From: Mizuhopecten yessoensis
Lineage: Eukaryota
Direction of reading: 5' to 3'
DNA: 64,000 bases
Assembly: GCF_002113885.1 (NCBI RefSeq)
Contig: NW_018403786.1
Coordinates: 792,776-856,775, forward strand
The notes beneath the pieces are model-generated. The model did no database searches, had not been told where the DNA came from, and saw nothing but the letters and a program-made list of their open reading frames with translations. Position numbers and translations under genes: made by a program. This document shows, piece by piece, positions 3,739 through 36,886 of this stretch. Positions within the stretch are counted from its first letter, which is position 1. Each line of letters begins with the position of its first letter.

Positions 3739-6700
3739 ATGGATGTGACCCGCATATTATTTTGCATGCTATTGACTTGGACAAACACTGCTACCATACA
3801 GGGTAAGTAACTGTTTGGTAACAATACCCTGTATGCTATCAAATCACAATACACATATAAAAATCAAAATATTTACCGAAGAAGGATGGAGATTGGAATA
3901 CATTGTGTTTTTATTGTACTATTATATCAAAAGAAAATACGACCTTCAGATCGTAAATAATATATTTTGGGAAAAAACACACTCTAATAATAAAATATCC
4001 TTAACAATTAACTTAAATAAAATGCCTCATTTCTTCCATAATCCCACAACAAAGGGAAAATGGAACAGCGTGCGATTATTTCACTTTTTCATGTTAAACC
4101 AAATTTTATCTTTTATCCCTTGCAAGAAATATTTCTTTTCAGCGGTTTCCATACCTAGCCACCCATCTTCAAATGGCAATGGCTGTAGCAAGAACGTTAA
4201 AACCTTTACAAGAATTCAAAATTAACATTGAACAAACATACTATGATTTTCTCAATGTGTATTATAATTAACCTTTTAATAAAATTTCACTGTGTGGTAT
4301 TATTTTACTGACTGATTTTCTTTGCTTCGTGATATAATATCACATTGTTGTGTTATTCACTGTGTGACGTTTTTTGCTCTGTGATATTATTTCATACTTT
4401 GGTGTTACTGTAGAATTGTGCTGTTTTTTAAAATGAGATATTACATCTAACGGGCGTTCGTTGTCAAAGTTTCCTTCCGTTTGAAACAAAATGATATATG
4501 ATAGAAAAAAAATAAGTCAATTGTTCTGCTATAGATTTATTTATTACCTTTAAATATGTTTGATATTTATGAAATTTTCTACTTGCTATTTTTTGATGGT
4601 CATTAATTCATATTACCAATAGTTTATAAAAATGCTCACCTTAATATTATAATACAATTTTGTTTCCCCCTCATTGTTACTGTTTTTCAGGTTATACGAT
4701 AACCTAAATCACGGAAAACAAAAAAAGTCATGATGTCGTTTAGTTGTAGTTGCTTCGCCATGAAATAACTGCGCATTGTTGTGTTTTGTGCAAAATGATT
4801 TACTTTTTAATAAACGAGTTTTCTTTTGCTATCGACTAATGAAATGTTGTGTGTCTGCTAAATTAATTTGTTTTTAGATTATACGGTATGTACTGAAAAA
4901 CCTGTGTGCACTTTGCAGAAGTCCGCGTAACGGTTTATGAACAAAATAGCACACGGATTTTTCGGTATATACAACATAATCCTAAATATATCCCGGTTAT
5001 TCCTTAATATCCATAATAATTCACGATTTTGTTCACAGCTCGGGAGGGGCCACCAGTTATTCTTTCCCAGTCTTTTCGCGAGGTCTACTACACGTTCTAC
5101 ACATCAAGCGTCAATCTCTCATGTACAGCAGACGGCTCATTTCCACTGACGTAAGTGAGGTGTAGGATTGATGTTACTGTTTTGTCGTCCTGATAAAAAG
5201 GTAGCTACATCCTGGCGATTTGGCTAGGGCGAAAATCTTGGAGCTAAGGTACCAAATGGCAGTTGTTACAATATTGTTAAACACGCTCTCTTGTACATAG
5301 TATGTATGCTACTTTATCCAGCAGGATCAATACCCCTTTTGTATATTGTGTAAATGAGCACCTGGTGTATATTCAGTAATGGTAATACATATCAAACCTT
5401 GCCTTATCTTCTTATTGTGTATACATTCAATATAGTGTGTATGTTCAATTTTACCACATCATTTTTGCTTTCTCCAGAACAAGTTTAATATATGGTAATG
5501 TGACTATATATTTATAAACTCTCTCCAAAACAGGTGGAACTTATGTTAAATGTAACCATATCTTTATTAGTTCTCTCTCAAACAAATGGAATGTATGTAA
5601 AATATAAATGTAATTTGTTAAAGCATACATGTATCTTAATACGGTGCGGATGGTTCATAAATTGTGAACATGTATTTATGTGTAGCTATAACGATTGGTA
5701 AAAGCTTTCTTCTCTCACAACTCTTTTGGTTGTTTTATTTTGTTTTATTGCAGCTTTGTTTGGGAACATTATGGAGCGGTAATCCAGAATATCACCGTAT
5801 ATAATTATGTATCAAATTTAACACTGAAACCTCAAGAAACATCATGGGTCGCAGGCACATACACTTGCATTGTGGGAAATAGGTATGGCCGTACGTCGAG
5901 TGACAGTATGGAGTTAACGGAAGTTACGCTATACCCAAGCACCACTCCTAGTGACGTAGTGTACGAATATCCTCCTCTGAACATGCCATATACGTTACGG
6001 TGTGACCATCCGAACAGTAACATAAAACCGGAAGTACAATGGATCAAGACCACAAAAACCGGAAACACGCCACGACGGATACAATATAATGAACGGATCA
6101 CATACGACACAACTGGTATGTCTTGATGATTACAAATTTCTATAATTTCATAAATATCAACAATCGGTTTCATATTCAAAATGTGGGTGTAAGAGCTTAT
6201 TTAGTTCGATGTCGTCATTTGCATGATTAATACATTGCAATTGCATACATGACGTCATTATTCCTCCGCCGACTACGTTTTCTTAAAATTAATACGGGGT
6301 AAAAAATGAATTGCAGGTAACGCATATGCTGATGCGGAGAACGAATATGTCTGCTATGTCTCACTACATTATTGTATAGGACGACTGATGTGGCCCATCG
6401 AAGCATCAGGGGTTTTCTGCTGCTTCTTCTACTCAACATAATTGCCACTGAAACACTAAGGACGCCCATATTTCTTTCTTCTTCCACATTTTTTCTTTTC
6501 GGTGTATATGGCAGCGTTTTGTATATTTTCGGTGTATATGTCAAAATAATATAACCGATTGAGGTGACATTCTTAAGTCAATGTTTCAGTGAGATAGCAC
6601 TTAACTATAGCCCTTGAGCTGCCCTATCATCTTAAGCCGCCGTCTGTGACCTATAAGAGGACACAAAACCCCAAAGCAACGCCTTGTTTACCTTGTTTGC

Positions 6701-9700
6701 CTTGTGGACCTATTCTTCCGCACAAATCCTCTTGATACCTTACATGTCATATACAGGCTTAAGAATGGTATTGATTGTACATTTATATAAAAACAAAAGT
6801 TTAAATTTGATGTATACAAAGACATCGGTTCAATCACTTGTCTAACTGTTTTATTTTTCAACAGGCAGTTTACATTTTGTGTACATCGTTACATCAGACA
6901 GAGGAGGGTACATGTGCAACATTTCCTACCCTGTCCTACAGTATTATATGCTTGGACCGACCGTCATTCTTGAACCAGAAGGTAAAGAAAATTAGTTTTT
7001 CTATAATCGCCAAATCCGCGAATGATAGTCCCAGCGAAAGCATCCTGTTTTCTAATAATGTAAATGCTTTATTTCGAAACATTATTGCCATATCAAGTTC
7101 AAATTAGCATGATTTAGACGCATTTGTATTAACGAGTTTTAAGTTGCTAAAACTATTGATTTTAATGTTCAATGGTAAACCACTGCCTTGACACAATATA
7201 GTATAGTTTTTATGATAATACAGTTTGAGCAAGCATACAAAACAGCAAGGTCTGTTGATTTTGATGTCCAATGGTTAACCACTGCCGTGTCACAATATAG
7301 TATAGTTTTTATGATAATACAGTTTGAGCAAGCATACAAAACAGCAAGGTCTGTATTTTTTCATCACTTCCATGACCTAGTTAAGTGACATATCCTGTAA
7401 TATAACAATAAGGATGTGCTGTTAACTGTCCTTGATGATTATTACCCTAGATAAATGATGACACACGTTCACGAACTGTTTGTCACTTGTAGACATGTAA
7501 CATGGCAGTATAAAACTTATCTATTCGACAAGTGAAGACTAATTTAACTTTCATTGTTATTACATTAGATACTGGATTCCAGCTGTCGACTGAATATCCT
7601 ATGTGGAATTCCGAGGAGTTCCCCACCGCACTGCGAGGTCAAAACCTAACGCTTAGATGTGTTTCTGGTGGAAAGTAAGCTAAACATGTACATTCACTAC
7701 CTTAGGCTATTCCCTACCTTACTGTGGCGTGCATTACCTCATAAAGAAATCCTTTAAAAGATGTTATGAATTGCTAATCAAATAATGGCCTGAAAGATAC
7801 ACAGGTGTGTATGCCTTCACAACAATCCTATACTTTACATTGTATAACAAATGCATCAACACTAGAGTCTTATCGAACTGATATATCATAAATCAAGTAT
7901 GTATATAAATTTACTTACTAGATACTTCTCTAACTAATAAACCAGTAATAAAACATTAGGTTTTCAGCAAACAGTGCTTGTCATAGGTTACCCCGAGTGT
8001 TCACATGGGCTTGTCATAAGTTACCCCGAATGTTCACGTGGGCTTGTCATAGGTTACCCCGAGTGTTCACATGGGCTTGTCATAAGTTATCCCGAGTGTC
8101 CACATGGGCTTGTCATAGGTAACCCCGTGTGTTTACGTGGGCTTGTCATAGGCTACCCCGAGTGGTAGCATGGGCTTGTCATAGGTTACCCCGAGTGTCC
8201 ACGTGGGCTTGTCATAGGTTACCCCGGGTGTTAACGTGGGATAGTCATATGTTACCCCGAGTGTTTACGTGGGCTTGTCATAGGTTACCCTGAGTGTTTA
8301 CGTGGGCTTGTCATAGGCTACCCCGAGTGTTAACGTGGGCTTGTCATAGGTTATCCCGAGTGTTAACGTGGCTTGTCATAGGTCACCCCGAGTGTTCACG
8401 TGGACTTGTCATAGGCTATCCTGAGTGTTAACGTGGGCTTGCCAAAGGTTACCCCGAGTGTTTACGTGGGCTTGTCATAGGTTACCCCGAGTGTTTACGT
8501 GGGCTTGTCATAGGTTACGTGGTCATGTTAATTTTTATTTCCACTGGTTTCTATTTCACCTTTGTTCCTTTCGTTTATAAATCAAAATACTGATAATCGT
8601 ATGTTGAAACTCCGTAGGCAAACAAAACCTCTCATTATTATTTCAGCCCGATTCCACAAATTAGATGGCAGAAGATTGAGGAAGATGGTACCGTTTTACC
8701 AGCGTTAAATCAGAATATTCAGGACCACGGTCGAAGTCTGACATTTCAGAACCTTAAATTTACAGATCGTGGGGAATATGAATGTACCACGGAAACACAA
8801 ACTATCCGGTTTGATGTGACAGTAGAGAGTGAGTGGTCTTATTTGCTCTGCTAGAATTTCAATATTATTTATTCAAACGTACGACAGCCCAGATCGTCCG
8901 TGAGGTGTAGAACGTGTGAAGCTCCAGTACCCATGAGGTCTATAGTGCGCGATAGAGCAGGTCGGCAATGATATCATCAGTGTGTGAAGTCTCGTTCAAC
9001 CAGACGCTTGATCACCTGTTTGGCGTTGCTTGTGCAGACAACAAGAGTCTGGTTGAACGAGACTACATTGTGTGACAAGCCTTGCTCGCTGTGAGGTCAA
9101 GTTCGTTTGAATGACCTCCAGATTTTGAGTGTTTGACACTCACGATCAATCGTGAGGTTCAGATTCGAGGACAACGTGGTCGGCAATGAAGTATAAAGCA
9201 TTTGATAATCCTCGGTTGGTTTCAATATAAAAAGTATATATGTGACAGACGACCTTGAGATAAGGAAAATGCAATAACCCCAGTTGCATCAAGAGCATGT
9301 GACCGTCCCCGGTCAGCCGTGAATATTAAGAAGTTCTGAACGTACGCCCCGTTTGAACATTTTAAAAGACACTTACCCTTCCAGAACACCTTGCATTATC
9401 ATTGACTTTTTCAGGGTTTCTTTGTAAATGTTTGATTATTCTGCATTTAGCCTAGATTTAATGTATTAAGTTCGGGTAGTAGTTTTGTTTACATTGAGCG
9501 TTTTTCACTGCAATACTGTTTGATTTGCAGAATACGAAAGGGGATTTCACCGATATATGTTGTTATTCGTATAAAAAATCGTTTAAAAGCAAGTACATTT
9601 TAGAACTCGCATAATACGAAAACGTTATCATAAGAAACAATTATGTGATTGTCATAAAACATTCCACACCTTCAACGATCTTGATGTAGCGTCTGTCATT

Positions 9701-12700
9701 TAGACATGTAGCCCTCTTAAGCTGAACTGTTGTTGTGCTATGTAAACATCAAGATGTCCTTATAGATGTCAAATGATATTTTGTTTTCAAAGGTACACCA
9801 TTTTGGATAGAAAAACCTAAACCAATCATCACTTCAGCAGGTACTGCAAATCCTCTCCCGTTTTTCTGTAGAGCGTACGGGGAACCTGTACCTGATATCT
9901 CGTGGTATATCAACACTGTGTCAGCGGCTGGTACGTATGTTCATACCGGAAGGAACATAAGGACTTAACTACATAAAGACTATGATTACAAATGGTTCAT
10001 AGACAGATGTTAATTGTCTTCAAGCAGATTTCCAAAAGTACAATTTATACTTAAAAACTGAAGAGTTACATTTTTTATTATTCAAACACATACATCAACA
10101 GTGTGACATTTTTTATTCAGGAAATACCTCCTCACCTATTTGGAGTGTGGGGGGTGGGGAGTATTAACTGTACATACTACGATGTATATGTTTTTATGAC
10201 AATATTGCAATAGAACATAAAGATACATTCTGATTTCATCTACAAATATGCCTTCTATCATTCCAGATCAAAATAATAACTTGGCGATTTATCATGTCAA
10301 CTCTACGCAAACCATCGACATGGCTTATAGTGTACTATACGTTACTACAAACGTCTCATTCTCCCTCAAATGTGTGTGTCACAATAACCACGGAAGTATT
10401 TCCTCCTACAGCTACCTATACATAACAGGTAAGCCTACGTGAGCATAACAAGTAAGCCTGCGTAAATATAACAGGTACGCTTACCTATCCATAACATGTA
10501 AGCCTACATAAACTAAACAGGTAAGCCTTCTTAAACACAACAAGTTAGCCTACCTTTCCGTAACGGGTAAGCCTATTTAAACAAAACAGGTACACTTACC
10601 TGTTCATGTAACAAGCTCGCCTACCTTTACGTAACAGGTAAGCATTTTAAGATAAAACAGGTACACTTATCTGTTCATGTAACAAGCTCGCCTACCTTTT
10701 CGTAACAGGTAAGCCTATTTAGATAAAACAGGTACACTTACCTGTTCATGTAACAAGCTCGCCTACCTTTTCGTAATGGGTAAGCCGATTTAGATAAAAC
10801 ATGTACACTTACCTGTTCATGTAACAAGCTCGCCTACCTTTTCGTAACAGGTAAGCATTTTAAGATAAAACAGGCACACTTACCTATTCATGTAACAACA
10901 TATCAGTAAACCTACTTATACATCACAGATATGATTTTCGGTAAATAACATATATGCATCGTAGTATCGTTCCTTGCTCATTGCACGAATACAAAGAAAC
11001 AGTACCTTCATGTAATTCTTATATTCCAGAACGGGTTACTCATCCACCAACAATTATACCAACCATTAAAACAACTCATATACCGTCCTCAAAGACAACT
11101 CCAGCATCAACCACGGCATCAACCACGGCTTCAACCACGGCATCAACAACGGCATCAACTACGACATCAACCCCATCTCCAACTACACGACCAACTCCGG
11201 CACCAACCTCTAAGCAACCTGCAGTGCCAACTCAAGCACCGAGTGAAGTGTCTGACAGCTCAAACACCGCCGTGATAGGTGGGGCGGCGGGAGCTGGTGT
11301 TGGTGTCGTCATCATTATAATCGCTGTGGTCTACTGTATCTGGTCTAAACGAAGGTACACTTGATTTTCGGTTATATACTGACATGTTATTTTTCTGTAA
11401 TTATACAATAGTGTATTCAGAATACGACAACGAGTGATCATGATCAAACTAATAAAAACAAGAATACATGACATATGTTTAATGCTGAATGAATCTTACT
11501 ATATATTCATCATGACCAAAAGGAATATACATTTTAGCTATATGAAATATATACACCAAAAGTTATAATATATGTATCTATATATTTCCGATAAACTAAT
11601 TAGTTACTGCATAGACTGTATCAGTAACTGGTAATATGTATTAGTGCGCTCTTTTGACTGTAAACTACTTACCCGGGTGTTGATTTTACCTGTGTGGTTT
11701 ACAGATTCTCTGATGGAATTTTACGTTCGTCATCGCTTGATTACCAGTTAAGATACTAAAACATTATTTATTAGATATTAATCAGTACTCTAGTTTTTCA
11801 CATTCAAATTAAATTTTTTTACGAACCCACCACCTCCCGTTTCACAAGTATTTTTTTCTCAATTGGGTTTTCCACCTTTCTGGCCCTTGGCATTATCATG
11901 GAGTCCCAGATGGACGAAACAGTTCCATAATGCAGTGTAATGTTTTTGGCATACACTAGTGTACTGTATATTTAAATACATTTTACATGTACAATTATCT
12001 GTGTCTTACGTTGCTCTTTCTGTTATGATTTCTGCTGAGTTTACTGATGTCGTTACCGTATCTACACCTGCTATGTCCTCTCGTATCTCTTCTGATGATG
12101 TCCTTTTATGATGGCACTTTGATATGTTAAATTTCGTAGATGATAACCATCAAAACCATTCAGGAAGTAACCTAACATTTTATTCCATATCGCCGGCTAG
12201 GCAAAGCATGGACCCAGTACAGAAGTATGATGCTAGAATGGGCTATGGTAACAGAGGATACAGCGACGTAGAAATGGACCGTGTGCAAAAACGCGATCAT
12301 AGGAGGGTGCATAAAAGCGAAATCCTACAAAAGGTATGGCACGATTTCATGTAAAGTAGTAAGATAGGTTATGTCAATAGGATGGACATTTCGTTTAAAT
12401 TCAAGTAACGACAAAACGTATTTAGTGTGTACGGCATTGGAGCAACCGATGACTTGGAAAATTGAAGTTTTATATAGCCATGTTTTTAGGTTTTTAATCT
12501 TGCAACGACTACCTTCAGAGTATTGTGTAACATCGGATTCTTGTTAAGTTAATTGTTTTAAATAGAAAACACATTGGCTCGAGGCTTCCTGTTTAAACTT
12601 CATTCAATATGTATAACATACTTATAACAACATAAACGTTGGAGGGATGGGGAAACAAGCGTATAGCTCTGGTTTGATCTTTTCTCAAATATTCGTCAAG

Positions 12701-13361
12701 AATGAATGTGCAATTTAACAGACATGAGATTTATTATTATTTCATTGAAATTTCACATATTGTATTTACATTTTCAATTGTTTAGCCACACAAGGAAGGA
12801 AAGGGAGAGACCTATACTGGTTTAACTAATGAGAGGGAGAACAAAAAGGGAAATGTGTATGAGCAACTTGGTGGTACCAATAATCCAGCCAATGTAGAAA
12901 ACAAGCCAGAGGAGGCAGAATACTGCTATATTAGTGATGCAGACATTTTGAAGCCTCAGAGACAGTCCCACATTCCTACCTCTGAATCAGCAGCCCCGAC
13001 AGGCGTTTTCAATAAAGAGGTGCCAAATTCTACCAAAACAAAGACACCGGGTGTTAAAGAAGACCCACGAACATCCATGACGAGACCGAACTCTAAACCC
13101 CTACCCGAGGTGCCTCCGACTCAGAATCCGCCATACGGTAAAATTGGTCGTTTCTCCAGTGGCAAGTACTCTGCAGTTGGTAACCCGGCGTATAGCAGTC
13201 GGGTCCCTCAACTCACACAACCAAAACAATTTTCCGCCCTTCCAACGTACATGGAACCTATCACAACAAAACTGTCCGGTCCAACTACCAACCAGGAACC
13301 TGTACCAATAACGCCTGACGATGGTTATTTTAAACTGGAACTCAGGCACGTGAAGATGTGA
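3739..13361 (+). CDS. Gene A: 4-Ig (L1/neuroglian/hemolin-like) type I membrane receptor with ITAM-like tail, 758 aa. Coding exons 3739-3802, 5039-5150, 5754-6115, 6865-6981, 7569-7674, 8647-8828, 9793-9930, 10267-10428, 11030-11354, 12201-12333, 12786-13361
   Basis: All introns are GT-AG with matching phases; total 2277 nt in frame. Signal peptide MDVTRILFCMLLTWTNTATIQA. Ig Cys/Trp pairs: LSCTADG..W..YTC; LRCDHP..W..ERITYD..GSLHF..YMC; PTALRGQNLTLRCVSGGNPIPQIRW..HGRSLTF..DRGEYEC; TPFWIEKP..FCRAYGEPVPDISW..CHNNHG. Then ASTT stalk, TM AVIGGAAGAGVGVVIIIIAVVYCIW-SKRR. Same exon structure as gene C. Confidence 0.9.
7155..7354 (+). repeat. 99-bp tandem duplication
   Basis: Two near-identical copies of CACAATATAGTATAGTTTTTATGATAATACAGTTTGAGCAAGCATACAAAACAGCAAGGTCTGT with their flanks. 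Confidence 0.9.
7975..8522 (+). repeat. 33-bp minisatellite, ~16 copies
   Basis: GGGCTTGTCATAGGTTACCCCGAGTGTTTACGT. Confidence 0.95.
8988..9064. mobile_element. Very short MITE-like inverted repeat
   Basis: AGTCTCGTTCAACCAGACGCTTG ... CAAGAGTCTGGTTGAACGAGACT, 23-bp arms with one mismatch. Confidence 0.65.
10412..10925 (+). repeat. ~23-bp minisatellite with 71-bp higher-order unit, starting at an exon end
   Basis: CTACCTATACATAACAGGTAAGC variants; TACACTTA recurs at 10591, 10662 and 10733. Confidence 0.85.
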
Positions 13362-16317: not shown

Positions 16318-18914
16318 ATGACAATGCTACACACGGCCTGTAACCTGATCGTAATGTGGGCGATATTTGATATCAATCAAGGTAATATCTCAATAACTTA
16401 AACGTTCATTTATTTGCTCAACCTGCATTCCTTAAATAGGCAGGCTTTATAGGATCAGTTGTAATTGTGTATTTGTTTCCATTTATGTACATGAAACATT
16501 GTCCTTATGATACCTATGATGTCATAGAGATCTGGATTTCCTTGATTTCACGGAGATTACGTTTACGATTGTCACATGTGTAACAGAAAACCTTTTCAGA
16601 TCACTTGGTTTTACTATGTTTGAGAGTTAAATCCTTTTCATTTGGTTTTATTCAAGTCAAATTTCTTCGTTCTTATAAATGCTTTTATAAGTGTAAAACT
16701 CTTTTAGTAGGGTTCAGATCTTGTCACAATACGTTGACATTGTTGTTGCTTTACACTTTACCTTCCCGCTATTTTAATCCGTATATTATTGATTTCAAAA
16801 CTGCAATAATATCTTTTGATATAATCAATCACTTGTGGTCAATTATGATAAGTTCTTTTTACACAACCAATTAAATTTTCTATGTGACGATTTGATGGCT
16901 AGTACGATATGTACACTGTCACCTTCATCAGACAAATGACCAATGAGGCGTATGTACACAAATGTGTCAAATGTGTACGAGTTGTCCACGAAATCGATGT
17001 TGATTTCGGCTACGCTGTAAGCGCATATACAAAAGTTGTTACATATGTACCGAAATGACTCGATTCAGCTACGCTTTGTTTAAATATTTGAAATATAAAT
17101 AAAGGTCAAATATTTTAAAAAAATAATCGATTTGACTAAGAACTAATATAGATTAATTCTAAAGACAATGAAGCCATGGAAACATCAAATTAAATAATTT
17201 CAAGCCATATTTTATGCATTTGCCTATCACAAAAAAAAAGGTTTTTAAACAAATATCGTGCAAATTGACTGCATCATTCATGGACTGCCTCGCTTACCAG
17301 TTACAGCAAAACAATCGCCGCCTCCACCTAAACCTACACAAGCTTCTCAAAACGAGCCGGATTCAAACTCGTCAAACTCCGCAGTGATAGGAGGGTCTGT
17401 GGGAGGGTGTATCGCGCTAATCATCATAGTCATCGTCGTAGTCTACTGTGTCTGGTCCAGACGAAGGTAGGTTATACATTGGCTGGTTTCATATATTATA
17501 AACTTGATTTCATATGTAGTTAATTGTTTTGTATCTATAGGATTGATTCTTTACTGCCTGGTATTGAAGCTTATATGATATTATTAATCATGAGGTATGC
17601 TAACTAAGTAGTTAGATTATGCTTCTAGTAAACTCGGTATGCATTATTATTCAATATCTTCGAAGTCATAATCATAATGTGTCCTTGTATTACAATAAAA
17701 TGTATTATGATATGGGTGAGAATCTAAGTATGTTTGGAAAGACAAAATCAACTACAGAATGCCAGTAGAGGGCAGTGTTAATTATTTTCCCAACGTTTTG
17801 TGTCTGTTAACGCTGTGGTACGGAACTGTTTTTCTCTTCAAGATTTTGCTTTGTTATTACTTATATGACAATACAATGTCAGCGTGTAAGACTATTAAAA
17901 TGTAATATTACTTATTTGTACAAATTTAGAAGCTGTCTATCACCAGCTTATACAATTTTTAGGATTGTATCCCATTAAAACTTAATTTGATCGTATGATT
18001 GTCTCCCTTTCAAAGAAAATTCAATCTCAAGTTTGAATTAACATTTTTATGAAAGGTGCAATACGCAAGTAGTAGATTCATGCTAAAACTGTACCAAAAC
18101 TCAAACATGTACATTGCGTATGTAATAAACTTAAGTTAGATAGATGTAAAAAAAAAAAAAGGAGAGAGAAAAAAACACTTGGTTTTTAAAGTAAATCCAC
18201 ATTAACATTGTATTACAGGAACCGAGGCCAATCAGACACCAAACCAAATGCCAGCATGGTCTTCAAAAATCATAGTAACAATGATGTAAAACAGGTTAGT
18301 AGCTTCAAGAAATTTGATCTTTAGATATTGTTCAGTAGCATAAAATCCAAAGATGATTTAGCAACTAAAATATTGTCCATTTGATCCTAAAGTTGTTTGG
18401 TCGCATTGCTTTGCATTCATTATTATTCGCTTCATAGATGCTTTGATGTATTCGCATGTAATGATATTATCGAACTGATATAATCAATAAAGTATTGTAG
18501 AAAAAATACTTATTTACCAGAAACAATTCTACCTAAACAGTGTAAATAATCACACCTTTTTACTTTCCCAACAAGCCCCGGGCATCAGAAGACAAGAGGG
18601 AACCTTATTCTGTTCTCTCCAACGCCAGCGAGAATGCAGCACAAAGAAATGTTTATGACGAGTTGGGTGGTGTCAGTAATGGGAACGGAACCCCAACTAC
18701 AAACGAGGAAGCAGAGTACTGCTATATCAGTGACAGTGATATAAAAGCGGCACAAAGACAGTCGGGGAATCCAATCCCATCAGTTAGAAATAACATGTCA
18801 CTAGGTGATCAAACTTACAGTGGTCAGACCGGAAATCAACACATCTCGACCTCTCCAGTTAACGGAGAACCTCATGAATATTTGGTACTGGAACCAGAAC
18901 ACACAAGCTTGTAG
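16318..18914 (+). CDS. Gene B: Ig-less paralog (signal peptide, short Pro/Ser stalk, TM, Tyr-motif tail), 214 aa. Coding exons 16318-16381, 17301-17466, 18219-18294, 18576-18914
   Basis: Each exon is homologous to an exon of gene C (MTMLHTACNLIVMWAIFDINQ vs MTMLQTVCRMIVMWAIFDIGH; NRGQSDTKPN vs NRGQPETKPN; EEAEYCYISDSDIKAAQRQS; LEPEHTSL*). Phases 1,2,0 are compatible; 645 nt with no internal stop. The last acceptor is a weaker AAG, and an in-frame alternative acceptor exists at 17306. Confidence 0.82.
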
Positions 18915-25832: not shown

Positions 25833-25924
25833 TGATAATCTATAAATATTCAAATATGTTTCACTCTTGCTTTGTACTTGTGAAACATATCGTTTTCTGT
25901 CGTACTCATGAACTAAAAATAGTA

Positions 25925-26490: not shown

Positions 26491-28568
26491 ATGACAATGT
26501 TGCAAACTGTCTGTAGAATGATTGTTATGTGGGCCATCTTTGATATTGGTCATGGTAAGTGTATTTCAAACCGAAATTACTATCTATCATATTTTTCATA
26601 CTCTTTCATATTTAGTTTACACTTTCTATATATTCAATCTCAGAGTCGGTATGTATTGCCCACATCAAACATAAACAAAATTCGGCAAACGGTTTTTACA
26701 AATAGATCGCCATAACATGCACTTTGTAGAATACTAGCCATGTACAAAAAAAAAGCCATACAGGCTTTACTTGAGGTAGATCATTACCGTTTTACCATCG
26801 ATCCAGATGGATACTGAGGGTTTCTGCTGAAGATTTTGGGTTTGTTTTCAATTGCAGTGTCATCTTCTCATGTTGATCTACGTATACAAAATGATTTAAA
26901 AACCAAAACTGTTAAATGATAATGCTTATCACAGAAATAGTCAACGTACTCGTCAATTGGAAGTATATTTTAAGCATTCACAGTAAAAAAAACCACCTTA
27001 TATTTCCAGCGTTATGCCGTCCAACTTGCTCACGTAAACTAAAGCATCAATTGAATAGTCAGTCTTAAAAAATGTTTCAGTTACATTTTCGTATCATTCA
27101 ATAATTTACCTTTATATTAATGATAAATAGCAACAAATCTAAATCGTAGAAAAATGAATCATTGAATAATTTACTTTATTATTTGATATTTAAATGTAGC
27201 AAATCTGAACGTCAGAACTATTCGATACAAATCGATTACTGAATAGATTAAATGCTATTATCTTTTAACAGCACGGAACGGTCCCCCAAAGATACTGCTC
27301 CAGCCTCAACAGTCATTGTACTACTCGGCTGTCTCTAACTCTAGTATAATGTTAACGTGTGGCGCGGACGGGTCTACCCCTATTAGGTAAGTCATAATAA
27401 ACATAATAATTTATCATAACCTAGTTCGTAGGTCGTCTCAAAGCGGTTCACAAATAAGTATCCGTGGTTATAGGGCCTTTGCAACCAGCCGACATCTTTC
27501 TCGACTCCCTGGGCAGCATACAACCGGTGCTGCCATGTCGGCGCTCACAGGTAGCATTCAACAATTCTAGCACTGCCCAACCACGTACTCATTTACAGCT
27601 GAGTAGACTGGAACAAGCGGAGTAAAGTATCTTGCTCAATGATACAACACAGTGCCGTGCCGTGACTCGAACCCGCAATCCTTCGGTCACGAGCCCGGCG
27701 TCCTACCGCTGGACTACCGTGCCTCCTAACATGTGTTGTTGACGTCTGGTATCTAGCCATGGGTTATATCATTGTGGTGTCTGCGCGTGTTTGGTCAATC
27801 ATGAATCATCTTTGGCGTCACTGTGTTGAAATGCCTTACAAAGGAATTTGGGGTATATCTTAACTTGGTCAAGTTACTGTAATAATGGCACATATTTGTT
27901 TTGGTGTTCACTGACCTTGACCTACTTTTCAGTTTTGCAACAACTTTGACATTTGTTGAACATATCAAACATACATTTTATACCTAGAAATTTGCGCTTG
28001 GCTGTTTACATTCAAAATATCTAAATTTGTTCAAAACAGTTTTACTTATCTTGTCTTTGGACCCCAAGTACACAAGCGTCTGTTATATTTGACTTGCAGC
28101 TGATGTTTCCACTTCATGCCATGTTGTCGGACCGCATAACAGTAACCGATATTAAACCAAACAAATTATTTACATTTTTTCTAATACAAAAATGCTATCG
28201 TTATATAGTCTATGAATAAGAAATGAGAATCGACCTTGATAAAATCTCAAGTTAGAGACAGTATAATCAACAAGGTAGCATAAATGATCAAACGTCTTTA
28301 TTGTGTGGTCGACGAAGTTGAACAGAGAATAAATTTATCAAGTAATGCTAAGTCCTCAATGTGGGAACTCAGATAGTGGCAAAGAACCAAACGGTGTAAT
28401 TACGAGATAAATCAAAATACATGACGTCCTTATCGCACAAAGCTGTTTTCCAAAGATTGTCCATGTGAGATCTTAATGATCATCATCACCATCTCCATCG
28501 CTCGAAACCTTGTGTTTAATGATAATGATTATATATTTATTTAACCAGGGTTACATATGGCCCTGCAT

Positions 28569-28603
<35 letters not shown>

Positions 28604-31600
28604 AGCATGACAACAATTTAAGATAACAGTATAAAAATGCAGTACATGGTATCATCACAGTCAATGTAACTTAAAATTTAGTAATCCTAAAGTATAATTC
28701 AATATTGAATATAATTCAATATAGCACACAAGTGTCACTGAATGATATGGTTAAAGCACTATCATTGTCAAATATACATGTAATGCTTATATAGCAAAGG
28801 GTGAAAAATGACAAGATATACACTAATATAGTGTGTATCAAAATGAGACAATGAAGTCGGTGTTGCAAGTGTTGTCAGTTGTCGACATTTGTCACGATTG
28901 TTTTTTATGTTGGACTTGATAAAAGGCTAATTGAAGAAATGCATACAATTCATTTTTTTCCCAGCCTCTGGAATAATCTTTTACATAATCCATCAGTATC
29001 CTGTACTATTCGTTCAATTTGAACGCGTGATTGTTTTTTGAATTTTGCAGATTATCATGGGAAAGGAATGGAGTCCCTGTAAAGTTTGAAAAATTCGAAA
29101 ACGGTGGCGGCGTTTTTGATTTAAATCATGCAATAAATAACCCCGCCCAGACCGACGAGGGAGAATATATTTGCTACGTCAGCAATGACCTCGGCCACAC
29201 CATGACGTACCCAATTCAGCTAACACAGGCAGTGTTAGATGATCATTCTAAACAGAATATCGTTTACGATGAGACAGCTGAACAGGGCAGTCCTTTTACA
29301 CTACCATGTGAAATCCCTTACAGCGTACCGGAACCGGAAGTATACTGGGTGAAGATTACTACCACCAGTAGTGTAACACCGCAGAACCGAATTCAATATG
29401 ACGAACGAATTACATCAGATATCAACGGTAACTTTGATATTTTGATTACATTTGTTAACATTTCATTTGATAACAGTATTATATTGCTTATCTATTGCAT
29501 CAAGTCAAATATTTATAGAGTATTATTCGTAGCGTCTCATATCTGTGAATGATAACTTTATTAATTAGTTTTTAAACCTGTATCTCTCGTTTATTGTTAT
29601 CATTGTTTCTCGCATCTCCGACAGAGATAGTCCACATAATACCCCATGCTAGATTTTTCTATCTCGTCCTATCTGTCTGGTACCTTTACGTGATATTTCG
29701 CGGAATTTTGACACTGCAGTGTATTCATCCACGCGTTAACGGCTTGAAATCGACAATATGCATTATAAATATTCTGTTTATCGTTATTTGTATTATTCTA
29801 ATGTTGTTGGATATTTGATGTTGTAGATAGAAAATATTCTACATTGAGAAATACCTAGTCTTTTTTGTAAGGACGGACTAGATTTTACGCGGGATCATTC
29901 AACTGTAGCTTTAGTAATAAAGAGGCTAATTTTGTATGGCCCCAGACGGGATACTTATAGTCTTTAGCAAAGTTTAATAGGGTTTTTTTCGAACGAAAAG
30001 GTGCAAAAAAAAATCAATTACCTATAACTGAGCCAGTCGAGTTATCTTAGTCTCGGGCTAGGATTCTGTAACATCCTAACCTCGGCTTACGCCTCGAATC
30101 TTAACCCTCGACAGAGATAACCCGAACTCACTCAGTTACAGGTTATAGGTTTTATTAAAGACTCTGGTAAGTTGTCACAGATATACTCATTTTAATAAAC
30201 ATTTTTATAAACTATACTTTATTAATGTATTAAGTTATTAGTTTACACACATTTCAATTAAGGATATTCATTATTTGTTAACACCTACAATAATCACTGG
30301 AAAAGGGACGTTAGGCAGTTTCATGTAAGTCCATGAAGTATGCTAAAAAGTAAACATTTCATACAAAATATTACCCTTTCCTTTATTAAGAATTCACTAG
30401 TGGAACTACAATCTTGTTTAGCTCAGAAGAAGTGAAAATATATGTCAAAAGTGTCAGTACGAAAAAAATGTTTCTAAATGGAACAATACAAATTGAAGTT
30501 CTGCAAATTTATTTTGTATTGTATACCCACCAAATCCCGGTATTATGAGGCTGGTTCAGCTAAGAGCTAGTTTGTGCATTCTGACATCTATTGGTGTGAT
30601 GTAAAATAGATACCATGGTATTTGAATGGCACTTTTATAGCTGATTTCACAGTTACAAAAGGCTTTACATACGCGTGCTTCCAAATAAAAGAGTATAGGC
30701 AATAGACACGGGCTAACGGGAAAACTGCATGAAGCACAACTATCTTAAACCTTCCTTTTCTAAAAGGTTTTGTAGTTTGGCTTAAAAAAATGAAGATATT
30801 AAAGGGAAGATGAAATTCAGTTTATCATTATTTGATATATAATAACAAGATCTAGTTTTATCAAAGGTTACCATTTTGACGTAATGAAGACTGTTGAATT
30901 CTTTATTTCGGTTTAGGTAACCTTCACGCCCTCTTCATTGAGAACTCAGATACTGGAAGGTACAGATGTGTCATCTACAATTCATTGCTCCAAAAAACAA
31001 CCTATGGCCCGATCTTCAACTTACAGACCACAGGTAAAATACACAGTTATTGACGTATGTTGAGATAGATCCTATATTTCGGTAGCCAATACGTAAGTAG
31101 TTTTATATCAATTCTACAACTTACTATAGTAAAAAATGACGCCACAAAATATCACGAATGAGTTAAGCTATTGTAAAATGAAGTTTTACTTTTTTTTTGC
31201 ACACTATCATATTTAAAAAAAAAAGTTTCCTGGTAACCCTCTACAAGTAAAATCGATATTTCACATTGGAAAAAAAAAATCAGAATATATTTAAGATTAA
31301 CCTAAACGGAAGGGTTTTGATATATACACGGTTTTATTTCCCCGTCACATTTCTTCGTTCAATTTTATTAAATACTTCTGAATTAAATATGATATATTGA
31401 GCTCATTGCGCTTTAAACATTTATTATTCATAAAAGGTACCTATAAATACATTTACTTCAGTTGGAAGTCAAACCACTGATCCCGAACTGATATGGAACT
31501 CGGACGAGTTCCCGGTAGCGTTACACGGAAGTGACGTCATGATCAGATGTATCGTTGGAGGCAGGTGAGAACGTTATGCATGTTTATAGGCGTGTGCATG

Positions 31601-34600
31601 TCTTTTTAAAGGGCAACAAATACATTAACTTCAATGATTAGATAAAAGAAATTAATCAATAATGTTATAATTTACATGTAAAATGGACTAAATTTCTTGA
31701 TACATACAAAATCATTTCTCACATTGATTAGTTAATGATGATGTTTCATTGGCTCTTTCGAATCACTTGGTTTTTGTCTGTTATTGCAGTGAGTGTTACG
31801 TCTATCTTATTTGTTTGTTTGTTTGTTTGTGTATTCCCGCTGTTCCTAGTGTTAATTTTTCGTATCAACTTCGATTCTTAAGATTTATATGTGTTGACGC
31901 TCTGGTATTTCTTCTTCTATTTCAACTTAATTTAAATGGATATGTTTCAAATAACAAATTCAATCGAGTTGATATATTTTGTCGCTACACCAGACCGCTA
32001 CCTCAAGTCGAATGGTACGACGACACGGGAGCCCCGATGAGATTGAATCAGGTGACAGATTACGGCAGAACCCTGATGTTGAGGAATGTCCGGTTTACTG
32101 ACGCTAGGTGGTATCAGTGTAGCGTTCCTGGAACAACTTTTACTGGCGGCGTCAATTTTCAACTTACTGTCGAAAGTAAGTTTCATACACGCCTAATGCA
32201 TAAAGTGGTATGATACATATTTAATTAAACGTTGTAATCATTATCGCAGAGCACGTTACATTTACAAATCACTTTTTGCACCGATGTATGATTAAACAAC
32301 GTATTCACGATAATTGACCATAATGAATAATATTATAAAGATTGTTGTTTTAATTGGCGATTGTCTCCCTTTGTAAATAACAGTGAAAACATTGATTTCG
32401 CGTGGAGAAATTTATGTGGAGACAATATTTCATAAAGCAAAATATGAAATGGTTCAAAGGTTGAAAGACTGACAATGAAGAGAAAACCACTGACGTGATG
32501 TAATCTTTGTCCGCTAGAGTTACTAATACCTGTATCTTTACACAGAGAGCCCCTCTTGGATCAGAAAACCTAATCCAATCAAAGCAAATGTTGGGGAACA
32601 GGTTAGCTTCAACTGCAGTGCTTCCGGTGTACCCGAACCTACTATCACGTGGTACATTGACACGACTCCAGTCGCAGGTATTTACAAACTGTACTCAGCC
32701 AATCATATGGCCCATGTTCCTTACCTCATTGGTGCTGTTACGTATGGAGTTGTCTGTTGGGATCTGCTTTATTCCCTGTGACGCCGTATATGATTAAATA
32801 ATGTCATAAAAACTAATATTTGCATTAATTTCTACAACATTTGCAATTTTCAGAATTAAAGAATAATTAACACCAGTTTTATAAAAATATGTTTAATCGA
32901 GTAAATAATAATTTATGTTATAAACTGTAAAATAAAACTCTATTACTAATGTCATCATTTTAAAAATGGCAAAGCACAAAAAGGAAATGAGCTAGAATAC
33001 AGAATGTGGGATTGACATAAACTGATATGTGCAATCAACTGTTCAACAACTTTGAAAAATTAAAAACTATATTAAGAATATTTACATATTTCTAATATTA
33101 TGTTATATGTCCATAAATGGTAACGTTAATAATTCCGATTAATAACACGCAATTGTTCATATCAAAACTTATAATATAGGACACGTACTTGGTTATGAGC
33201 ACTGCTGACATTTGATCCATACTACACTTGCTTGTTTATATTAATAATTACGATATATGACACGTAATTGTTTATATTAATGATAAAGATACATTGTATA
33301 TGACCATTCTCAGTTTGTATCACCAGGTGACCTTCATTCCGGTATCTGACTATAGCCCAGGTTCCGGTATCTGACTATAGCCCAGGTTTCGGTATCTGAC
33401 TATAGCCCAGGTGTCTCCTTTGTCATTATAGACGTTCCGGCCAATAAAAAACCTTCCCGAATAGAGAACACACAATTAACAGGTTCCACAACGAGCATTC
33501 TCCACTTCATGGCAACTTCGTCCTTTACTGTCATCTGTGAGGCCTCCAACAGCCATGACTATATATGGGATGGGACCTTCCTATACGCCGAAGGCAAAAA
33601 CTTTGATTCTTCAATATAACCGATGATGTTGAAATAATGTCCAAATACATTTTCCATTGTTAATATCCCAGATGTGATCATTTTAGTATTATGATAAGCT
33701 TTTTAACATCGTTTTGTGGATTCTTTTATTTCGATGTAAACTGTATTTTTGTAATGATTTACTTATACAAATCTTATATCGAAGGTATTTAATAAATTTC
33801 TGTAAGCATATTGTGTAATTCCTGATCAACCTTACTTAATGTTTACAGGACTACCACCGACTACGTCTACACAAGCTCCTACACAAGCCCCGACCACGCC
33901 TAAGCCGGCTGGTCAGTCGTCTAACTCCGCCGCGATCGGCGGGTCGGTGGGAGGAATCATCGCTGTTGTCGTCGCCATCGTCGTTGTCTTCTGTGCCTGG
34001 TCTAAACGAAGGTGTTTATAAGATGTTGAACCTTTTCTTCTCAGGTTTTATCCTGTTTATAAATATAAGTTCATAATATAAAATCATCAATAGAATATAT
34101 ACTGTGTCATGATCATCATATAGCAAGAGTATTATTATGATCTTCCTTATAAAGGATCTATGATAACCCATATGATTGATATATGATACCCATAACTAGG
34201 ATATATGATAACCCATAAGATTTATATTTGATAACACATAAGATTGATATATGATAACCCATATGATTGATATATGATACCCATAACTAGGATATATGAT
34301 AACCCATAAGACTTATATATGATAACCCATAAGATTGATATATGATAACCCATTAGATTGATATATGATACCCCATAATATTGATATATGATAACCCATT
34401 AGATTGATATATGATACCCCATAAGATTGATATATGATAACCCATAAGATGGATATATGATAACCCATAATATTGATATATGATAACCCATAAAATTGAT
34501 ATATGATAACCCATAATATTGATATATGATAACCCATAAGATTAATATATGATAACCCATAAGATTGATATATGATAGCCCATAAGATTGATATATGATA

Positions 34601-36886
34601 ACCCATAAGATTGATATAAGATATCCATAAGATGGATATATGATAACCTATAAGATTTATATATGATAACCCATAAGATTGATATATGATTACCCATAAG
34701 ATTGATATATGATAATCCATTAGATTGATATATGATACCCAATAAGATTAATATATGATAACCCATAAAATTGATATATGATAACCCATTATATTGATAT
34801 ATGATAACCCATAAGGTTAATATATGATAACCCATAAGATTGATATATGATAACCCATAATATTGATATATGATAACCCATAGTATTGATATATGATAAC
34901 CCATAAAATTGATACATGATAACCCATAATATTGATATATGATGACCCATAAGGTTGATATATGATAACCCATAAGATTGATATATGATAACCCATAATA
35001 TTGATATTTGATAACACATAAGATTGATATATGATAACCCATATGATTGATATATGATACCCAATAAGATTAATGTATGATAACCCATAAGATTAATATA
35101 TGATAACCCATAAGATTAATATATAATAACCCATAATATAGATATATGATAACCCATAAGATTGATATATGATAACCCATAATATTGATATTTGATAACA
35201 CATAAGATTGATATATGATAACCCATATGATTGATATATGATACCCAATAAGATTAATGTATGATAACCCATAAGATTAATATATGATAACCCATAAGAT
35301 TAATATATGATAACCCATAATATAGATATATGATAACCCATAAGATTGATATATGATAACCCATAAAATTGATATATGATAACCCATATGATTGATATAT
35401 GATACCCAATAAGATTAATGTATGATAACCCATAAGATTAATATATGATAACCCATAAGATTAATATATGATAACCTATAAGATTAATATATGATAACCC
35501 ATAATATAGATATATGATAACCCATAATATTGATATATGATAACCCATAATATTGATATTTGATAACACATAATATTGATATATGATAACCCATATGATT
35601 GATATATGATAACCCATAATATTGATATATGATAACCCATAATATTGATATTTGATAACACATAATATTGATATATGATAACCCATAGGATTGATATATG
35701 ATACACAATAAGATTAATATATGATAACCCATTAAATTTATAAAGGATATCCCAAAGGATTGATATATGAAACCCGTAAGATGGATATATGATACTCCAT
35801 AAGATTAATATATGATATCCCATAAGATTGATATATGATACCCCATCAAATTGATTTTTGATAACTCATAAAATTGATATATGATTACCCATAAGACTGA
35901 TATTTGATAACCCATAGAATTGATATATGTTAACCCATAAGAGTGATAAATGATAACCCATACGATTGATAACTGATCGCATTATTTTTCATCCATATAA
36001 AGATATCATTAACAGTAATAGATCGTTTAAACTGGCATAAATGAAAACTCGAGTAAAAATGAAACCATTAAAATAATATATATTACAGGAACAGAGGCCA
36101 ACCAGAAACCAAACCAAACGTCACCATGGCCTATAGAAACCGTGGTTGTATTGATGTGGAACAGGTTTGTAAATATAAAATATATCTTTATTCTGGGGTT
36201 TTTTGGGTTTTTTTAATAATTGATCATTGTAATTTCAATAAATGGAAAACAACATGAATTATTCTATTGACATATTTCGTGTTTAATAATCAATTATGGT
36301 GTTATTAATAGTTTCGTTATTCGATGGATGAAATAAATGCACTGAATAACACGAACAAGGTATACTATCAGACAAATTCACAAGTACAGTAAGTAAATGG
36401 ACCTTAGAACCATTCCTAATCATATTTCCATTTCAGCCGACGGCATCTGGAGGCAAAGGGGAGCCCTACTCCGGTCTTTCCAATGCCAGGGATAAAGCGC
36501 CACAAGGAAACGTGTATGACGAGTTGGACGCTGCAAGTAATGGCGCAAGAGCCTTAGATAAGAACGAGGAAGCAGAATACTGCTACATCAGCGATAGTGA
36601 TATAAAAGCGGCACAAAGACAGTCGAAAAACCCCATCCCATCAGTTAGAAACAACAAGTCTCCAGGAGCATCCAACTCAGAATCCAGTCCCGTATCAACT
36701 TCTGTTGGATACAATTCCTCCAGTGGGAAAAAGCTGAGTCACTTCCCAAGTGGTAAATACTCATCAATGAATGACCCTATGTACCAAGGGCAGACCGGAA
36801 ATCAAGATTCCCCGTCATCACCAGAGTACTTGGAACCGAGAACCCACGAGTATTTCGTGCTGGAACCAGAACATACCAGCCTGTAG
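26491..36886 (+). CDS. Gene C: 4-Ig (L1/neuroglian/hemolin-like) type I membrane receptor with ITAM-like tail, 646 aa. Coding exons 26491-26554, 27272-27386, 29051-29427, 30917-31033, 31462-31564, 31994-32175, 32546-32677, 33432-33593, 33849-34011, 36089-36164, 36437-36886
   Basis: Total 1941 nt in frame; one GC donor is required at 33594. Motifs: GPPKILLQP..LTCGADG, W..DEGEYICYVSNDLG, LPCEIPYSVPEPEVYW..YDERITSDINGNLH..DTGRYRC, ALHGSDVMIRCIVGGRPLPQVEW..YGRTLML..WYQC, SPSWIRKP..FNCSASGVPEPTITW..CEASNSH. TM AAIGGSVGGIIAVVVAIVVVFCAW-SKRR. Exon sizes 64, 117, 182 and 162 are identical to gene A. Confidence 0.9.
27392..27726 (-). mobile_element. tRNA-derived SINE
   Basis: Minus strand starts GGAGGCACGGTAGTCCAGCGG (A box) .. 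GGTTCGAGTC (B box), then conserved-core-like TTGAGCAAGATACTT and CTCAGCTGTAAATGAGTAC, a LINE-like tail GTGAACCGCTTTGAGAC and an AT-rich simple end. Confidence 0.85.
30021..30149. repeat. Imperfect palindrome (MITE-like) with central CTCGGCTTACGCCTCG
   Basis: TAACTGAG..GAGTTATCT..GGGCTAGGATT pairs with AATCTTAACCC..AGATAACCC..CTCAGTTA. Confidence 0.55.
33337..33412 (+). repeat. 25-bp tandem repeat x3
   Basis: TTCCGGTATCTGACTATAGCCCAGG. Confidence 0.9.
34160..35975 (+). repeat. 23-bp satellite, ~78 copies, in gene C intron
   Basis: GATAACCCATAAGATTGATATAT. Confidence 0.97.

What the first reader, a model, noticed from the sequence alone, without database searches (positions are those of the whole stretch)
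16318..18914. Gene B: receptor paralog that cleanly lost all seven Ig-coding exons and looks like a dedicated transmembrane signalling adaptor
Seen: the signal exon (phase 1) is followed 919 bp later, with no gap, by the stalk/TM exon (phase 1). The Ig exons total over 1.1 kb in A and C and cannot fit. The ORF is intact, the tail deletion relative to C is in frame, and differences from C in the EEAEYCYISDSD block are synonymous (GAG/GAA, TAT/TAC, AGT/AGC, GAC/GAT), suggesting purifying selection. Knowledge: a short ectodomain, TM, juxtamembrane Cys and multiple Tyr motifs is the architecture of DAP12/FcR-gamma and LAT/PAG-type adaptors. Inference: independent origin of such an adaptor (or of a constitutive/dominant-negative modulator) by phase-symmetric exon loss.
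Basis: partly seen in the sequence, partly recalled or inferred. Interest (0 to 1): 0.85.

Follow-up and report, generated by a model that had tools for sequence, protein, structure and literature searches.

The report
Scallop receptor paralogue without Ig domains
In the Yesso scallop, a small gene between two immunoglobulin-type receptor genes keeps their signal peptide, membrane anchor and tyrosine-rich tail but has no binding domains; four scallop genera have kept it intact, so it is a working gene whose role as a signalling helper is still untested.

Summary
The window is Mizuhopecten yessoensis scaffold NEDP02000459.1. Gene B has four GT-AG exons: 16318-16381, 17301-17466, 18219-18294 and 18576-18914. 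It encodes 214 aa, identical to NCBI LOC110454285. Neighbours A and C each carry seven Ig-coding exons (1188 nt in C), and no Ig relic is detectable anywhere between A and C.

The main new result is that the loss is old. The same Ig-less four-exon gene lies just upstream of the C-type gene in Argopecten irradians, Pecten maximus and Ylistrum balloti. The B sequences form one clade (support 95/96 and 97/98) beside C, with A as the Ig-bearing outgroup. All four ORFs are open, pN/pS is below 1 in every pair, and four tyrosines and a GxxxG membrane motif are invariant.

This rules out a relic or an assembly artefact. The DAP12/FcR-gamma comparison fails: B has no charged membrane residue and no ectodomain cysteine, and A and C carry the same tail themselves. 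A LAT/PAG/SIT-like scaffold or modulator is plausible but untested, and no RNA evidence could be obtained here. Interest is moderate.

The parts
16318..16381 (+). Gene B exon 1: start codon and hydrophobic signal-peptide segment; 64 nt, ends in phase 1
   Evidence: It is 76% nt and 65% aa identical to the 64-nt signal exon of C at 26491-26554. AlphaFold models a helix at residues 2-24.
16382..17300 (+). Gene B intron 1: 919 bp, no gap, no Ig-exon remnant
   Evidence: No N in this stretch. tblastn with three C-type proteins at E up to 10, and blastn with the C Ig region, find nothing beyond chance here. No tandem repeat.
17301..17466 (+). Gene B exon 2: about 25 aa of Pro/Ser/Asn-rich stalk, the membrane helix with the IGGxVGG (GxxxG) motif, Cys71 and the RRR stop-transfer; 166 nt, enters in phase 1
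   Evidence: hydropathy peak at residues 46-77. It is homologous to the TM exons of C (33849-34011) and A (11030-11354). I51, G52, G53, G56 and A60 are invariant.
18219..18294 (+). Gene B exon 3: 76-nt juxtamembrane cytoplasmic exon
   Evidence: The exon is 76 nt in all four species and in C.
18576..18914 (+). Gene B exon 4: cytoplasmic tail with Y113 (YSVL), Y129 (YDEL), Y150/Y152 (EYCYISDSD) and Y204 (EYLVLEPE), then the stop codon
   Evidence: No Pfam family reaches its cut-off.
18702..18800 (+). Most conserved tail block (NEEAEYCYISDSDIKAAQRQS.NPIPSVRNN); differences from C are almost all synonymous
   Evidence: 8 synonymous and 2 non-synonymous codon differences in 33 codons.
26491..36886 (+). 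Gene C, the closest paralogue: signal exon 26491-26554, seven Ig exons 27272-33593, TM exon 33849-34011, exon 36089-36164, tail 36437-36886
   Evidence: NCBI splits it into P0011 (450 aa) and P0001 (232 aa).
5038..13361 (+). Gene A, the outgroup paralogue: seven Ig-exon hits 5038-10436, TM exon 11030-11354, extra cytoplasmic exon near 12112-12351, tail 12786-13361
   Evidence: The NCBI product of 648 aa ends at this position.

Best explanation
SHOWN. Gene B is a real, long-conserved, protein-coding paralogue in a scallop-specific family of Ig-type membrane receptors. It descends from a C-like, Ig-bearing gene in a tandem A-B-C cluster. It lost the whole seven-exon Ig block before the four sampled scallop genera diverged. 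What remains is a signal peptide, a short unfolded stalk, one membrane helix and the family's tyrosine-motif tail.

INFERRED. B cannot bind the ligands of A and C, so it most likely acts as a ligand-blind signalling subunit or scaffold. It either joins A/C-type receptors or itself through the invariant GxxxG membrane motif, or is phosphorylated by the same kinases. It would then offer the same phosphotyrosine docking sites: an ITAM-like YxxL/I pair 8-12 residues apart, plus YCYI and YLVL. That would tune, amplify or buffer the receptors' output.
For: Gene model and annotation:
- The model is intact and identical to the independent NCBI and genome-paper annotations.

Conservation in four genera:
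- The same four-exon, Ig-less gene lies a few kb upstream of the C-type gene in A. irradians (L004 10001-12698), P. maximus (L005 10001-16308) and Y. balloti (L006 2181-4734).
- Exon sizes are 58-64 / 166-289 / 76 nt, with the same phases.
- No Ig relic is found in any of them.

Phylogeny:
- The B clade has support 95/96 on tails with A as outgroup, and the B|C split has 97/98 on TM plus tail.

Selection:
- Omega is 0.23-0.53, with pN/pS below 1 in every pair. A neutral ORF of this size stays open in at most about 1% of simulations at 0.2 substitutions per site and about 0.1% at 0.35.

Conserved features:
- Y113, Y129, Y150, Y152 and the IGGxxG motif are invariant across B and C.
- P. maximus has multiplied the DKREPYTSL unit as 7.1 perfect 51-nt repeats, which points to the tyrosine motif as the working unit.
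- The fold prediction shows only the signal helix, the membrane helix and one short helix.
- SFK-ITAM-Syk signalling exists in invertebrates (Draper-I/Shark, PMC4503800).
Against: - No transcript or protein evidence could be obtained. Only genome contigs carry the exact protein.
- B evolves about twice as fast as C: 46-54% against 63-80% identity over the same 134 columns. It has also lost the SGKY...DPVY and EY.EP tyrosines of A and C.
- The P. maximus reference allele has a premature stop that removes the last roughly 80 codons.
- The YxxL spacing in this gene is 12, outside the strict ITAM range.
- YxxL/I motifs can equally be endocytic sorting signals.
- Association through the membrane helix is purely inferred.
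Confidence: 0.6

Rival explanations
1. B is a decoy or dominant-negative. It holds the same docking motifs without a ligand-binding part. It therefore soaks up kinases or SH2 partners, or forms unproductive mixed dimers with A/C, and dampens signalling.
For: The anatomy is the same as for the best explanation. Draper-II, an isoform with an altered tail, antagonises Draper-I in Drosophila (PMC4503800). B has lost some of the tyrosines of A and C.
Against: Sequence alone cannot separate an activating from an inhibiting role. No ITIM-type (I/V/L/S)xYxx(L/V/I) motif is present around any tyrosine.
Confidence: 0.2
2. B has a function unrelated to receptor signalling. It could be a small glycosylated membrane protein whose YxxL/I motifs are sorting or endocytosis signals, with the fast-changing stalk (Gly/Ser-rich and 90 aa long in A. 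irradians) as the relevant part.
For: The stalk evolves fast (omega 0.68) and varies greatly in length among species. YxxL/I also fits the YxxPhi sorting consensus (established knowledge).
Against: The strongest conservation is in the tail and the membrane motif, not the stalk.
Confidence: 0.12
3. B exons 2-4 mainly serve as an alternative 3' end for read-through transcripts of gene A. The last Ig exon of A ends in phase 1, and B exon 2 accepts phase 1.
For: The phases are compatible. A, B and C share one strand, and B lies 3 kb downstream of A.
Against: B has its own signal exon, homologous to that of C and conserved in four genera. The NCBI and original annotations call B as a separate gene.
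Confidence: 0.04
4. B is a decaying remnant of a partial duplication, or an assembly collapse that hides Ig exons.
For: The P. maximus allele has a premature stop. B evolves faster than C. No read-level data were available.
Against: Four independent assemblies show the same Ig-less structure, with intron 1 of 455, 556, 919 and 4600 bp. The ORFs are open at dS 0.7-1.9, and pN/pS is below 1. The intron has no gap.
Confidence: 0.03

Closest known systems
C-type paralogue of the same cluster (M. yessoensis P0011 + P0001; A. irradians 'neuroglian-like' XP_069141988; P. maximus 'hemicentin-2-like'; Y. balloti 'L1-like')
   Same: Homologous signal exon, stalk/TM exon, 76-nt exon and tail. B and C of this species are 66% identical over shared columns. 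Same strand and same cluster.
   Different: C has seven Ig-coding exons (396 codons) and extra tail tyrosines (SGKY, DPVY, EY.EP). B has none of these and evolves about twice as fast.
Vertebrate transmembrane adaptor proteins LAT, PAG, NTAL, LIME, SIT (by function only)
   Same: Very short ectodomain, one membrane helix with no charged residue, a cysteine at the cytoplasmic edge of the membrane, and a disordered tail with several conserved tyrosine motifs.
   Different: No sequence homology. B has a cleavable-type signal peptide, one Cys rather than CxxC (and none in P. maximus), and no YxN Grb2-type motif. Its origin from an Ig receptor is traceable.
DAP12 / FcR-gamma / CD3-zeta / DAP10 adaptors
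   Same: Small type I membrane proteins with paired YxxL/I motifs.
   Different: B has no acidic membrane residue and no ectodomain cysteine. Its YxxL pair is 12 residues apart, against 6-8. The neighbouring receptors have no basic membrane residue and carry their own tails.
Drosophila Draper-I / Draper-II (ITAM receptor and its modulating isoform)
   Same: An invertebrate tyrosine-motif system (SFK-ITAM-Syk) in which a variant of the same gene product modulates the full receptor (PMC4503800).
   Different: Draper variants are splice isoforms that keep the ectodomain. B is a separate gene that lacks it. There is no homology.

Membership tests
DAP12/FcR-gamma/CD3-zeta-type ITAM adaptors | Acidic residue inside the membrane helix that pairs with a basic residue of the receptor | tested here: not met
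   Residues 48-72 of P0002 contain no D, E, K or R. The TM segments of A and C have no basic residue.
DAP12/FcR-gamma/CD3-zeta-type ITAM adaptors | Ectodomain cysteine that forms disulfide-linked dimers | tested here: not met
   The cysteines are at 8 (signal peptide), 58 and 71 (membrane) and 151 (tail). None lies in the stalk.
DAP12/FcR-gamma/CD3-zeta-type ITAM adaptors | Canonical ITAM: YxxL/I, 6-8 residues, YxxL/I | tested here: not met
   In B the motif is YSVL, then 12 residues, then YDEL. The orthologues have spacings of 8 (P. maximus, last unit), 10 (A. irradians) and 12 (Y. balloti). Only the loose 6-12 definition is satisfied.
DAP12/FcR-gamma/CD3-zeta-type ITAM adaptors | Serves receptors that lack a signalling tail of their own | tested here: not met
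   A and C carry the same tail motifs themselves.
Palmitoylated transmembrane adaptors (LAT/PAG/NTAL/LIME) | Very short ectodomain and a long tyrosine-motif tail | tested here: met
   About 25 stalk residues. Four invariant tail tyrosines plus Y204. The tail is disordered in the model.
Palmitoylated transmembrane adaptors (LAT/PAG/NTAL/LIME) | Juxtamembrane CxxC palmitoylation motif | tested here: inconclusive
   A single Cys71 (YCVWSRRR) is conserved in three of four B orthologues and in C, but is Tyr in P. maximus B. Palmitoylation cannot be tested here.
Palmitoylated transmembrane adaptors (LAT/PAG/NTAL/LIME) | Sequence homology to a family member | tested here: not met
   No Pfam family is above its cut-off. 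The PDB search gives only a weak TM-region hit to sodium-channel beta-2. Only six representatives match the tail among 1.84 billion proteins; the four with named sources are scallop proteins, one is a Logan sequence of unidentified species, and one is the window's own B.
Palmitoylated transmembrane adaptors (LAT/PAG/NTAL/LIME) | Tyrosine phosphorylation and SH2-protein recruitment | not testable with these tools
   Needs biochemistry.
Scallop A/B/C Ig-receptor family (defined here by the shared TM and tail) | Shared IGGxVGG membrane motif and EPY..L / VYDEL / EYCYISDSD / EY..LEP tail, in the tandem cluster | tested here: met
   synteny.
Scallop A/B/C Ig-receptor family (defined here by the shared TM and tail) | Ig-domain ectodomain | tested here: not met
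   No Ig exon or relic lies between 13362 and 26480. This is the point of the finding.
Unprocessed pseudogene / duplication relic | Disabled ORF or neutral substitution pattern | tested here: not met
   The ORF is open in four genera, omega is 0.23-0.53 and pN/pS is below 1 in bootstraps. The exception to note is the premature stop in the P. maximus reference.

The most novel reading that the evidence does not exclude
Scallops made their own transmembrane signalling adaptor by removing the ectodomain from an Ig receptor, converging on the vertebrate DAP12/FcR-gamma and LAT-type adaptors. Its docking capacity can be tuned by copy number: P. maximus carries seven perfect copies of the EPYxxL unit. 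This would be a case where the origin of an adaptor can be traced exon by exon.
Probability: 0.3. Interest if true: 0.7.

Novelty: new variant of a known kind. Interest (0 to 1): 0.5.

Why it matters
The origins of the small tyrosine-motif adaptors of vertebrate immune cells are obscure. Here the parent receptor, the exon block that was lost, the preserved reading phase and the age of the event can all be read from four genomes. If B does signal, it shows how such adaptors arise, and it gives bivalve immunology a defined three-gene module to test. If it does not, it is still a clear example of a domain-loss paralogue kept by selection.

Tried and rejected
- Pfam on the tail exons and on P0002: nothing reaches a cut-off. 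The sub-threshold RCR, Protocadherin and Mid2 hits cover the membrane and low-complexity region.
- PDB sequence search: only a weak hit (E about 3e-4) of the membrane region to sodium-channel beta-2, taken as compositional.
- Looking for transcripts through exact-protein look-ups of P0002, P0004 and P0007: only genome assemblies were returned. The Logan contigs for P0003 are unspliced genomic tail exons of an unidentified species.
- Literature: no paper mentions LOC110454285 and none describes this family. Divergence dates for the four genera were not found in text, so depth is given as dS only.
- Homology between B intron 1 and the introns of C, to locate a deletion breakpoint: nothing is left.
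- Recent gene conversion as the explanation for the conserved EEAEYCYISDSD block: synonymous differences are present, so it is not recent. The unusually high B-C identity in this species leaves older conversion open.
- The neighbouring kinase as a functional partner: it is a generic protein-kinase domain hit, and no link to the cluster was shown.
- AlphaFold model: low confidence (pLDDT 52). It is used only to say that no folded domain appears. No fold search was run on it.

Full report
SOURCE. The window is not human. It is Mizuhopecten yessoensis (Yesso scallop), assembly GCA_002113885.2, scaffold NEDP02000459.1, with gene B at about 809,093-811,689 of that record. GC content is about 33%. 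N runs are at 14992, 38849-39328 and 45187 only, and they were left untouched.

OBSERVATION. Reading the sequence and checking every junction by script gives four exons for B:
- 16318-16381 (64 nt)
- 17301-17466 (166 nt)
- 18219-18294 (76 nt)
- 18576-18914 (336 nt plus the stop)

All junctions are GT-AG. The phases are 0 / 1 / 2 / 0 on entry. The product is 214 aa. Intron 1 is 919 bp and has no gap.

Self-comparison finds the paralogous exons of C at 26480-26558, 33917-34020, 36081-36171 and 36442-36887. It also finds the TM and tail exons of A at 11260-11357 and 12909-12967. Nucleotide identity is 75-78%. Pfam confirms Ig domains in the internal exons of A and C and finds nothing in the tails.

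Mapping the NCBI Ig model of C gives seven Ig-coding exons totalling 1188 nt. A gives seven matching hits. The quoted synonymous differences are all there.

HOW SEARCHES WERE DONE. The joined B sequence entered later searches only as the database's own identical record, P0002. The joined Y. balloti B model and the joined signal-TM-tail part of C were built only inside local scripts, for alignment, trees and substitution counts. They were never sent to a search or a fold, so that step is left out.

WHAT IT IS. A search with the tail of C returned P0002, a 214-aa 'uncharacterized protein LOC110454285' (OWF55867.1, XP_021359393.1).

A profile of the three tails, run against 1.84 billion representative proteins, found only six proteins. 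Four have named sources and are scallop proteins, one is a Logan sequence of unidentified species, and one is the window's own B. The family, as defined by its tail, therefore appears to be restricted to scallops.

Two of the six are short and lack Ig domains:
- P0004 of Argopecten irradians, 283 aa.
- P0007 of Pecten maximus, 270 aa.

Their loci show the same layout. An A-type tail lies upstream. Then comes a four-exon Ig-less gene of 58/289/76/426 nt or 64/166/76/504 nt. A C-type Ig gene of 653-656 aa follows downstream on the same strand.

In Ylistrum balloti, the region upstream of the C orthologue holds an apparently unannotated fourth copy at L006 2181-4734. Its exons are 64/169/76/468 nt, with an open ORF of 259 aa.

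No Ig remnant is found in any B locus. Here that holds even at E = 10 across the whole 13362-26480 interval.

ORIGIN AND AGE. On the tail exon, with A as outgroup, the four B sequences form a clade (95/96). That clade sits beside or within the C sequences, and the A clade has 100/100 support. On TM plus tail, the B|C split has 97/98 support.

Both A and C carry the same seven-exon Ig block. The simplest reading is therefore one duplication of a C-like gene, followed by one loss of the block, before these four genera diverged. This is an inference from the topology and the outgroup state.

Depth is given by dS of 0.7-1.9 between B orthologues, which is near saturation. I could not find dated divergences in text.

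SELECTION. By the Nei-Gojobori method, B against C in this genome gives these omega values:
- overall 0.23
- tail 0.17
- TM 0.26
- 76-nt exon 0.43
- stalk 0.68
- signal exon 0.07

Between B orthologues, where both lineages lack Ig domains, omega is 0.23-0.53. The uncorrected pN/pS has 95% bootstrap limits below 1 in all six pairs.

In substitution-only simulations, a neutral 214-codon ORF stays open in 59 of 5000 runs at 0.2 substitutions per site, 6 of 5000 at 0.35, and 0 of 5000 at 0.7. All four species have kept it open.

B is nevertheless less constrained than C: 46-54% against 63-80% identity over the same 134 columns.

ANATOMY AND LIKELY MECHANISM. The hydropathy profile, motif scan and a low-confidence AlphaFold model (pLDDT 52) give the following picture:
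- An N-terminal hydrophobic helix (residues 2-24).
- About 25 unfolded stalk residues with one N-x-S/T site at N44.
- A membrane helix (about residues 48-72).
- Cys71 at the cytoplasmic edge, followed by RRR.
- A disordered tail with one short helix (155-165).

Invariant positions across all B and C sequences are I51, G52, G53, G56 (a GxxxG pair), Y113, Y129, Y150, Y152 and the block SDI.AAQ..S..PIP.V. Y204 (EYLVLEPE) is kept wherever the C-terminus exists.

The first two tyrosines form a YxxL/I pair separated by 12 residues here, and by 8, 10 and 12 in the orthologues. That is ITAM-like only under the loose definition.

B orthologues have lost the SGKY...DPVY and EY.EP tyrosines that A and C keep. 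This species has deleted that stretch in frame.

P. maximus has expanded the DKREPYTSL unit to 7.1 perfect 51-nt copies. This suggests that this tyrosine motif is what selection or drift is acting on.

From these points I infer a ligand-blind membrane scaffold that shares kinases, SH2 partners, or membrane-helix contacts with A and C. Whether it amplifies or dampens their signal cannot be told from sequence. Invertebrate SFK-ITAM-Syk signalling, and modulation of a receptor by a variant of itself, have a precedent in Draper-I/II (PMC4503800).

COMPARISON WITH KNOWN ADAPTORS. The DAP12/FcR-gamma class is defined by four features: an acidic membrane residue, an ectodomain disulfide, a tight ITAM, and partner receptors without tails. 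All four were tested and not met.

The LAT/PAG/SIT class matches in general architecture only. There is no homology. B has a signal peptide, a single Cys instead of CxxC, and no YxN motifs.

B is best described as a new, lineage-specific, adaptor-like offshoot of an Ig receptor family, and not as a member of any known adaptor family.

CAVEATS.
- No expression evidence could be obtained with these tools. The identical NCBI and genome-paper models, and the three XP accessions for one P. maximus protein, are only suggestive.
- The P. maximus reference has an in-frame stop at L005 16306. The old C-terminus is still readable downstream. This could be a recent truncation or a single allele.
- B and C of this species are more alike (66%) than B and C in the other three species (46-49%). 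This may reflect slower change or past gene conversion.
- Signal-peptide cleavage, glycosylation and palmitoylation are inferred from sequence, not predicted by a dedicated tool.

VERDICT. The specific DAP12-type analogy is rejected. The adaptor function is plausible but untested. The gene is already annotated as uncharacterised. Its origin and conservation have not, as far as my searches show, been described.

Noticed in passing
window 33432-34011 (also 21110-21180 and 26487): NCBI splits gene C into a 450-aa Ig protein (P0011, which reads through the donor at 33593 to a stop at 33617) and a 232-aa TM+tail protein (P0001, which starts at an intronic ATG). A GT-AG, phase-1 junction from 33593 to 33849 gives a single receptor collinear with the 644-685-aa orthologues. 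P0011 also has an extra upstream coding exon at 21110-21180, spliced to 26487. The homologous acceptor sits 4 nt upstream of B's ATG, so B probably has an upstream non-coding exon too.
   Followed up: partly
L005 15805-16167 and 16306 (Pecten maximus): The P. maximus B orthologue has 7.1 perfect copies of a 51-nt repeat that encodes the DKREPYTSL tyrosine unit. It also has a premature in-frame stop, after which the ancestral C-terminus (EYLVIEPD) is still in frame.
   Followed up: partly
L006 2181-4734 (Ylistrum balloti): An intact four-exon, 259-aa B orthologue lies 5 kb upstream of the C-type gene. It is not among the called genes of that record.
   Followed up: yes
window 16318-18914 against 26491-36886: B and C of M. 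yessoensis are 66% identical over shared columns, against 46-49% for B and C in the other three scallops. They alone share the K in SDIKAAQ. Possible past gene conversion or slower change; not resolved.
   Followed up: partly
window 43662-43760, 48380-48661, 49049-49171, 52041-52328 (+): A protein-kinase gene lies downstream of C (Pfam Pkinase, E 1.5e-15, on 48278-48736). Its position is syntenic with a 413-aa kinase gene downstream of C in Y. balloti. No functional link to the receptor cluster was shown.
   Followed up: partly
window 44511-46167: A large C-rich tandem array (23- and 114-nt periods, about 73 copies) causes the GC-skew dip of -0.66. It lies between the kinase exons.
   Followed up: no
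window 34155-35971: About 79 copies of a 23-nt tandem repeat fill most of the intron of C between the TM exon and the 76-nt exon. B's corresponding intron (17467-18218) has none.
   Followed up: no
window 53236-55216 (-): Open frames with a reverse-transcriptase domain (RVT_1, E 1e-8) indicate a non-LTR retroelement fragment. Repeated sequence at 52575-52800 and 55063-55314 flanks it.
   Followed up: no
window 3340-3676, 7976-8518, 10539-10898, 40403-41482, 57296-58492, 61628-61962: Several further minisatellite arrays (periods of 26-71 nt), some inside introns of gene A.
   Followed up: no
L002 and L003 (Logan SRR26445941, SRR27895284): Genomic contigs from an unidentified species carry a C-type tail exon (P0003, 47% identical to the tail of C) with a duplicated DP.YRG motif. 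The organism was not identified.
   Followed up: no
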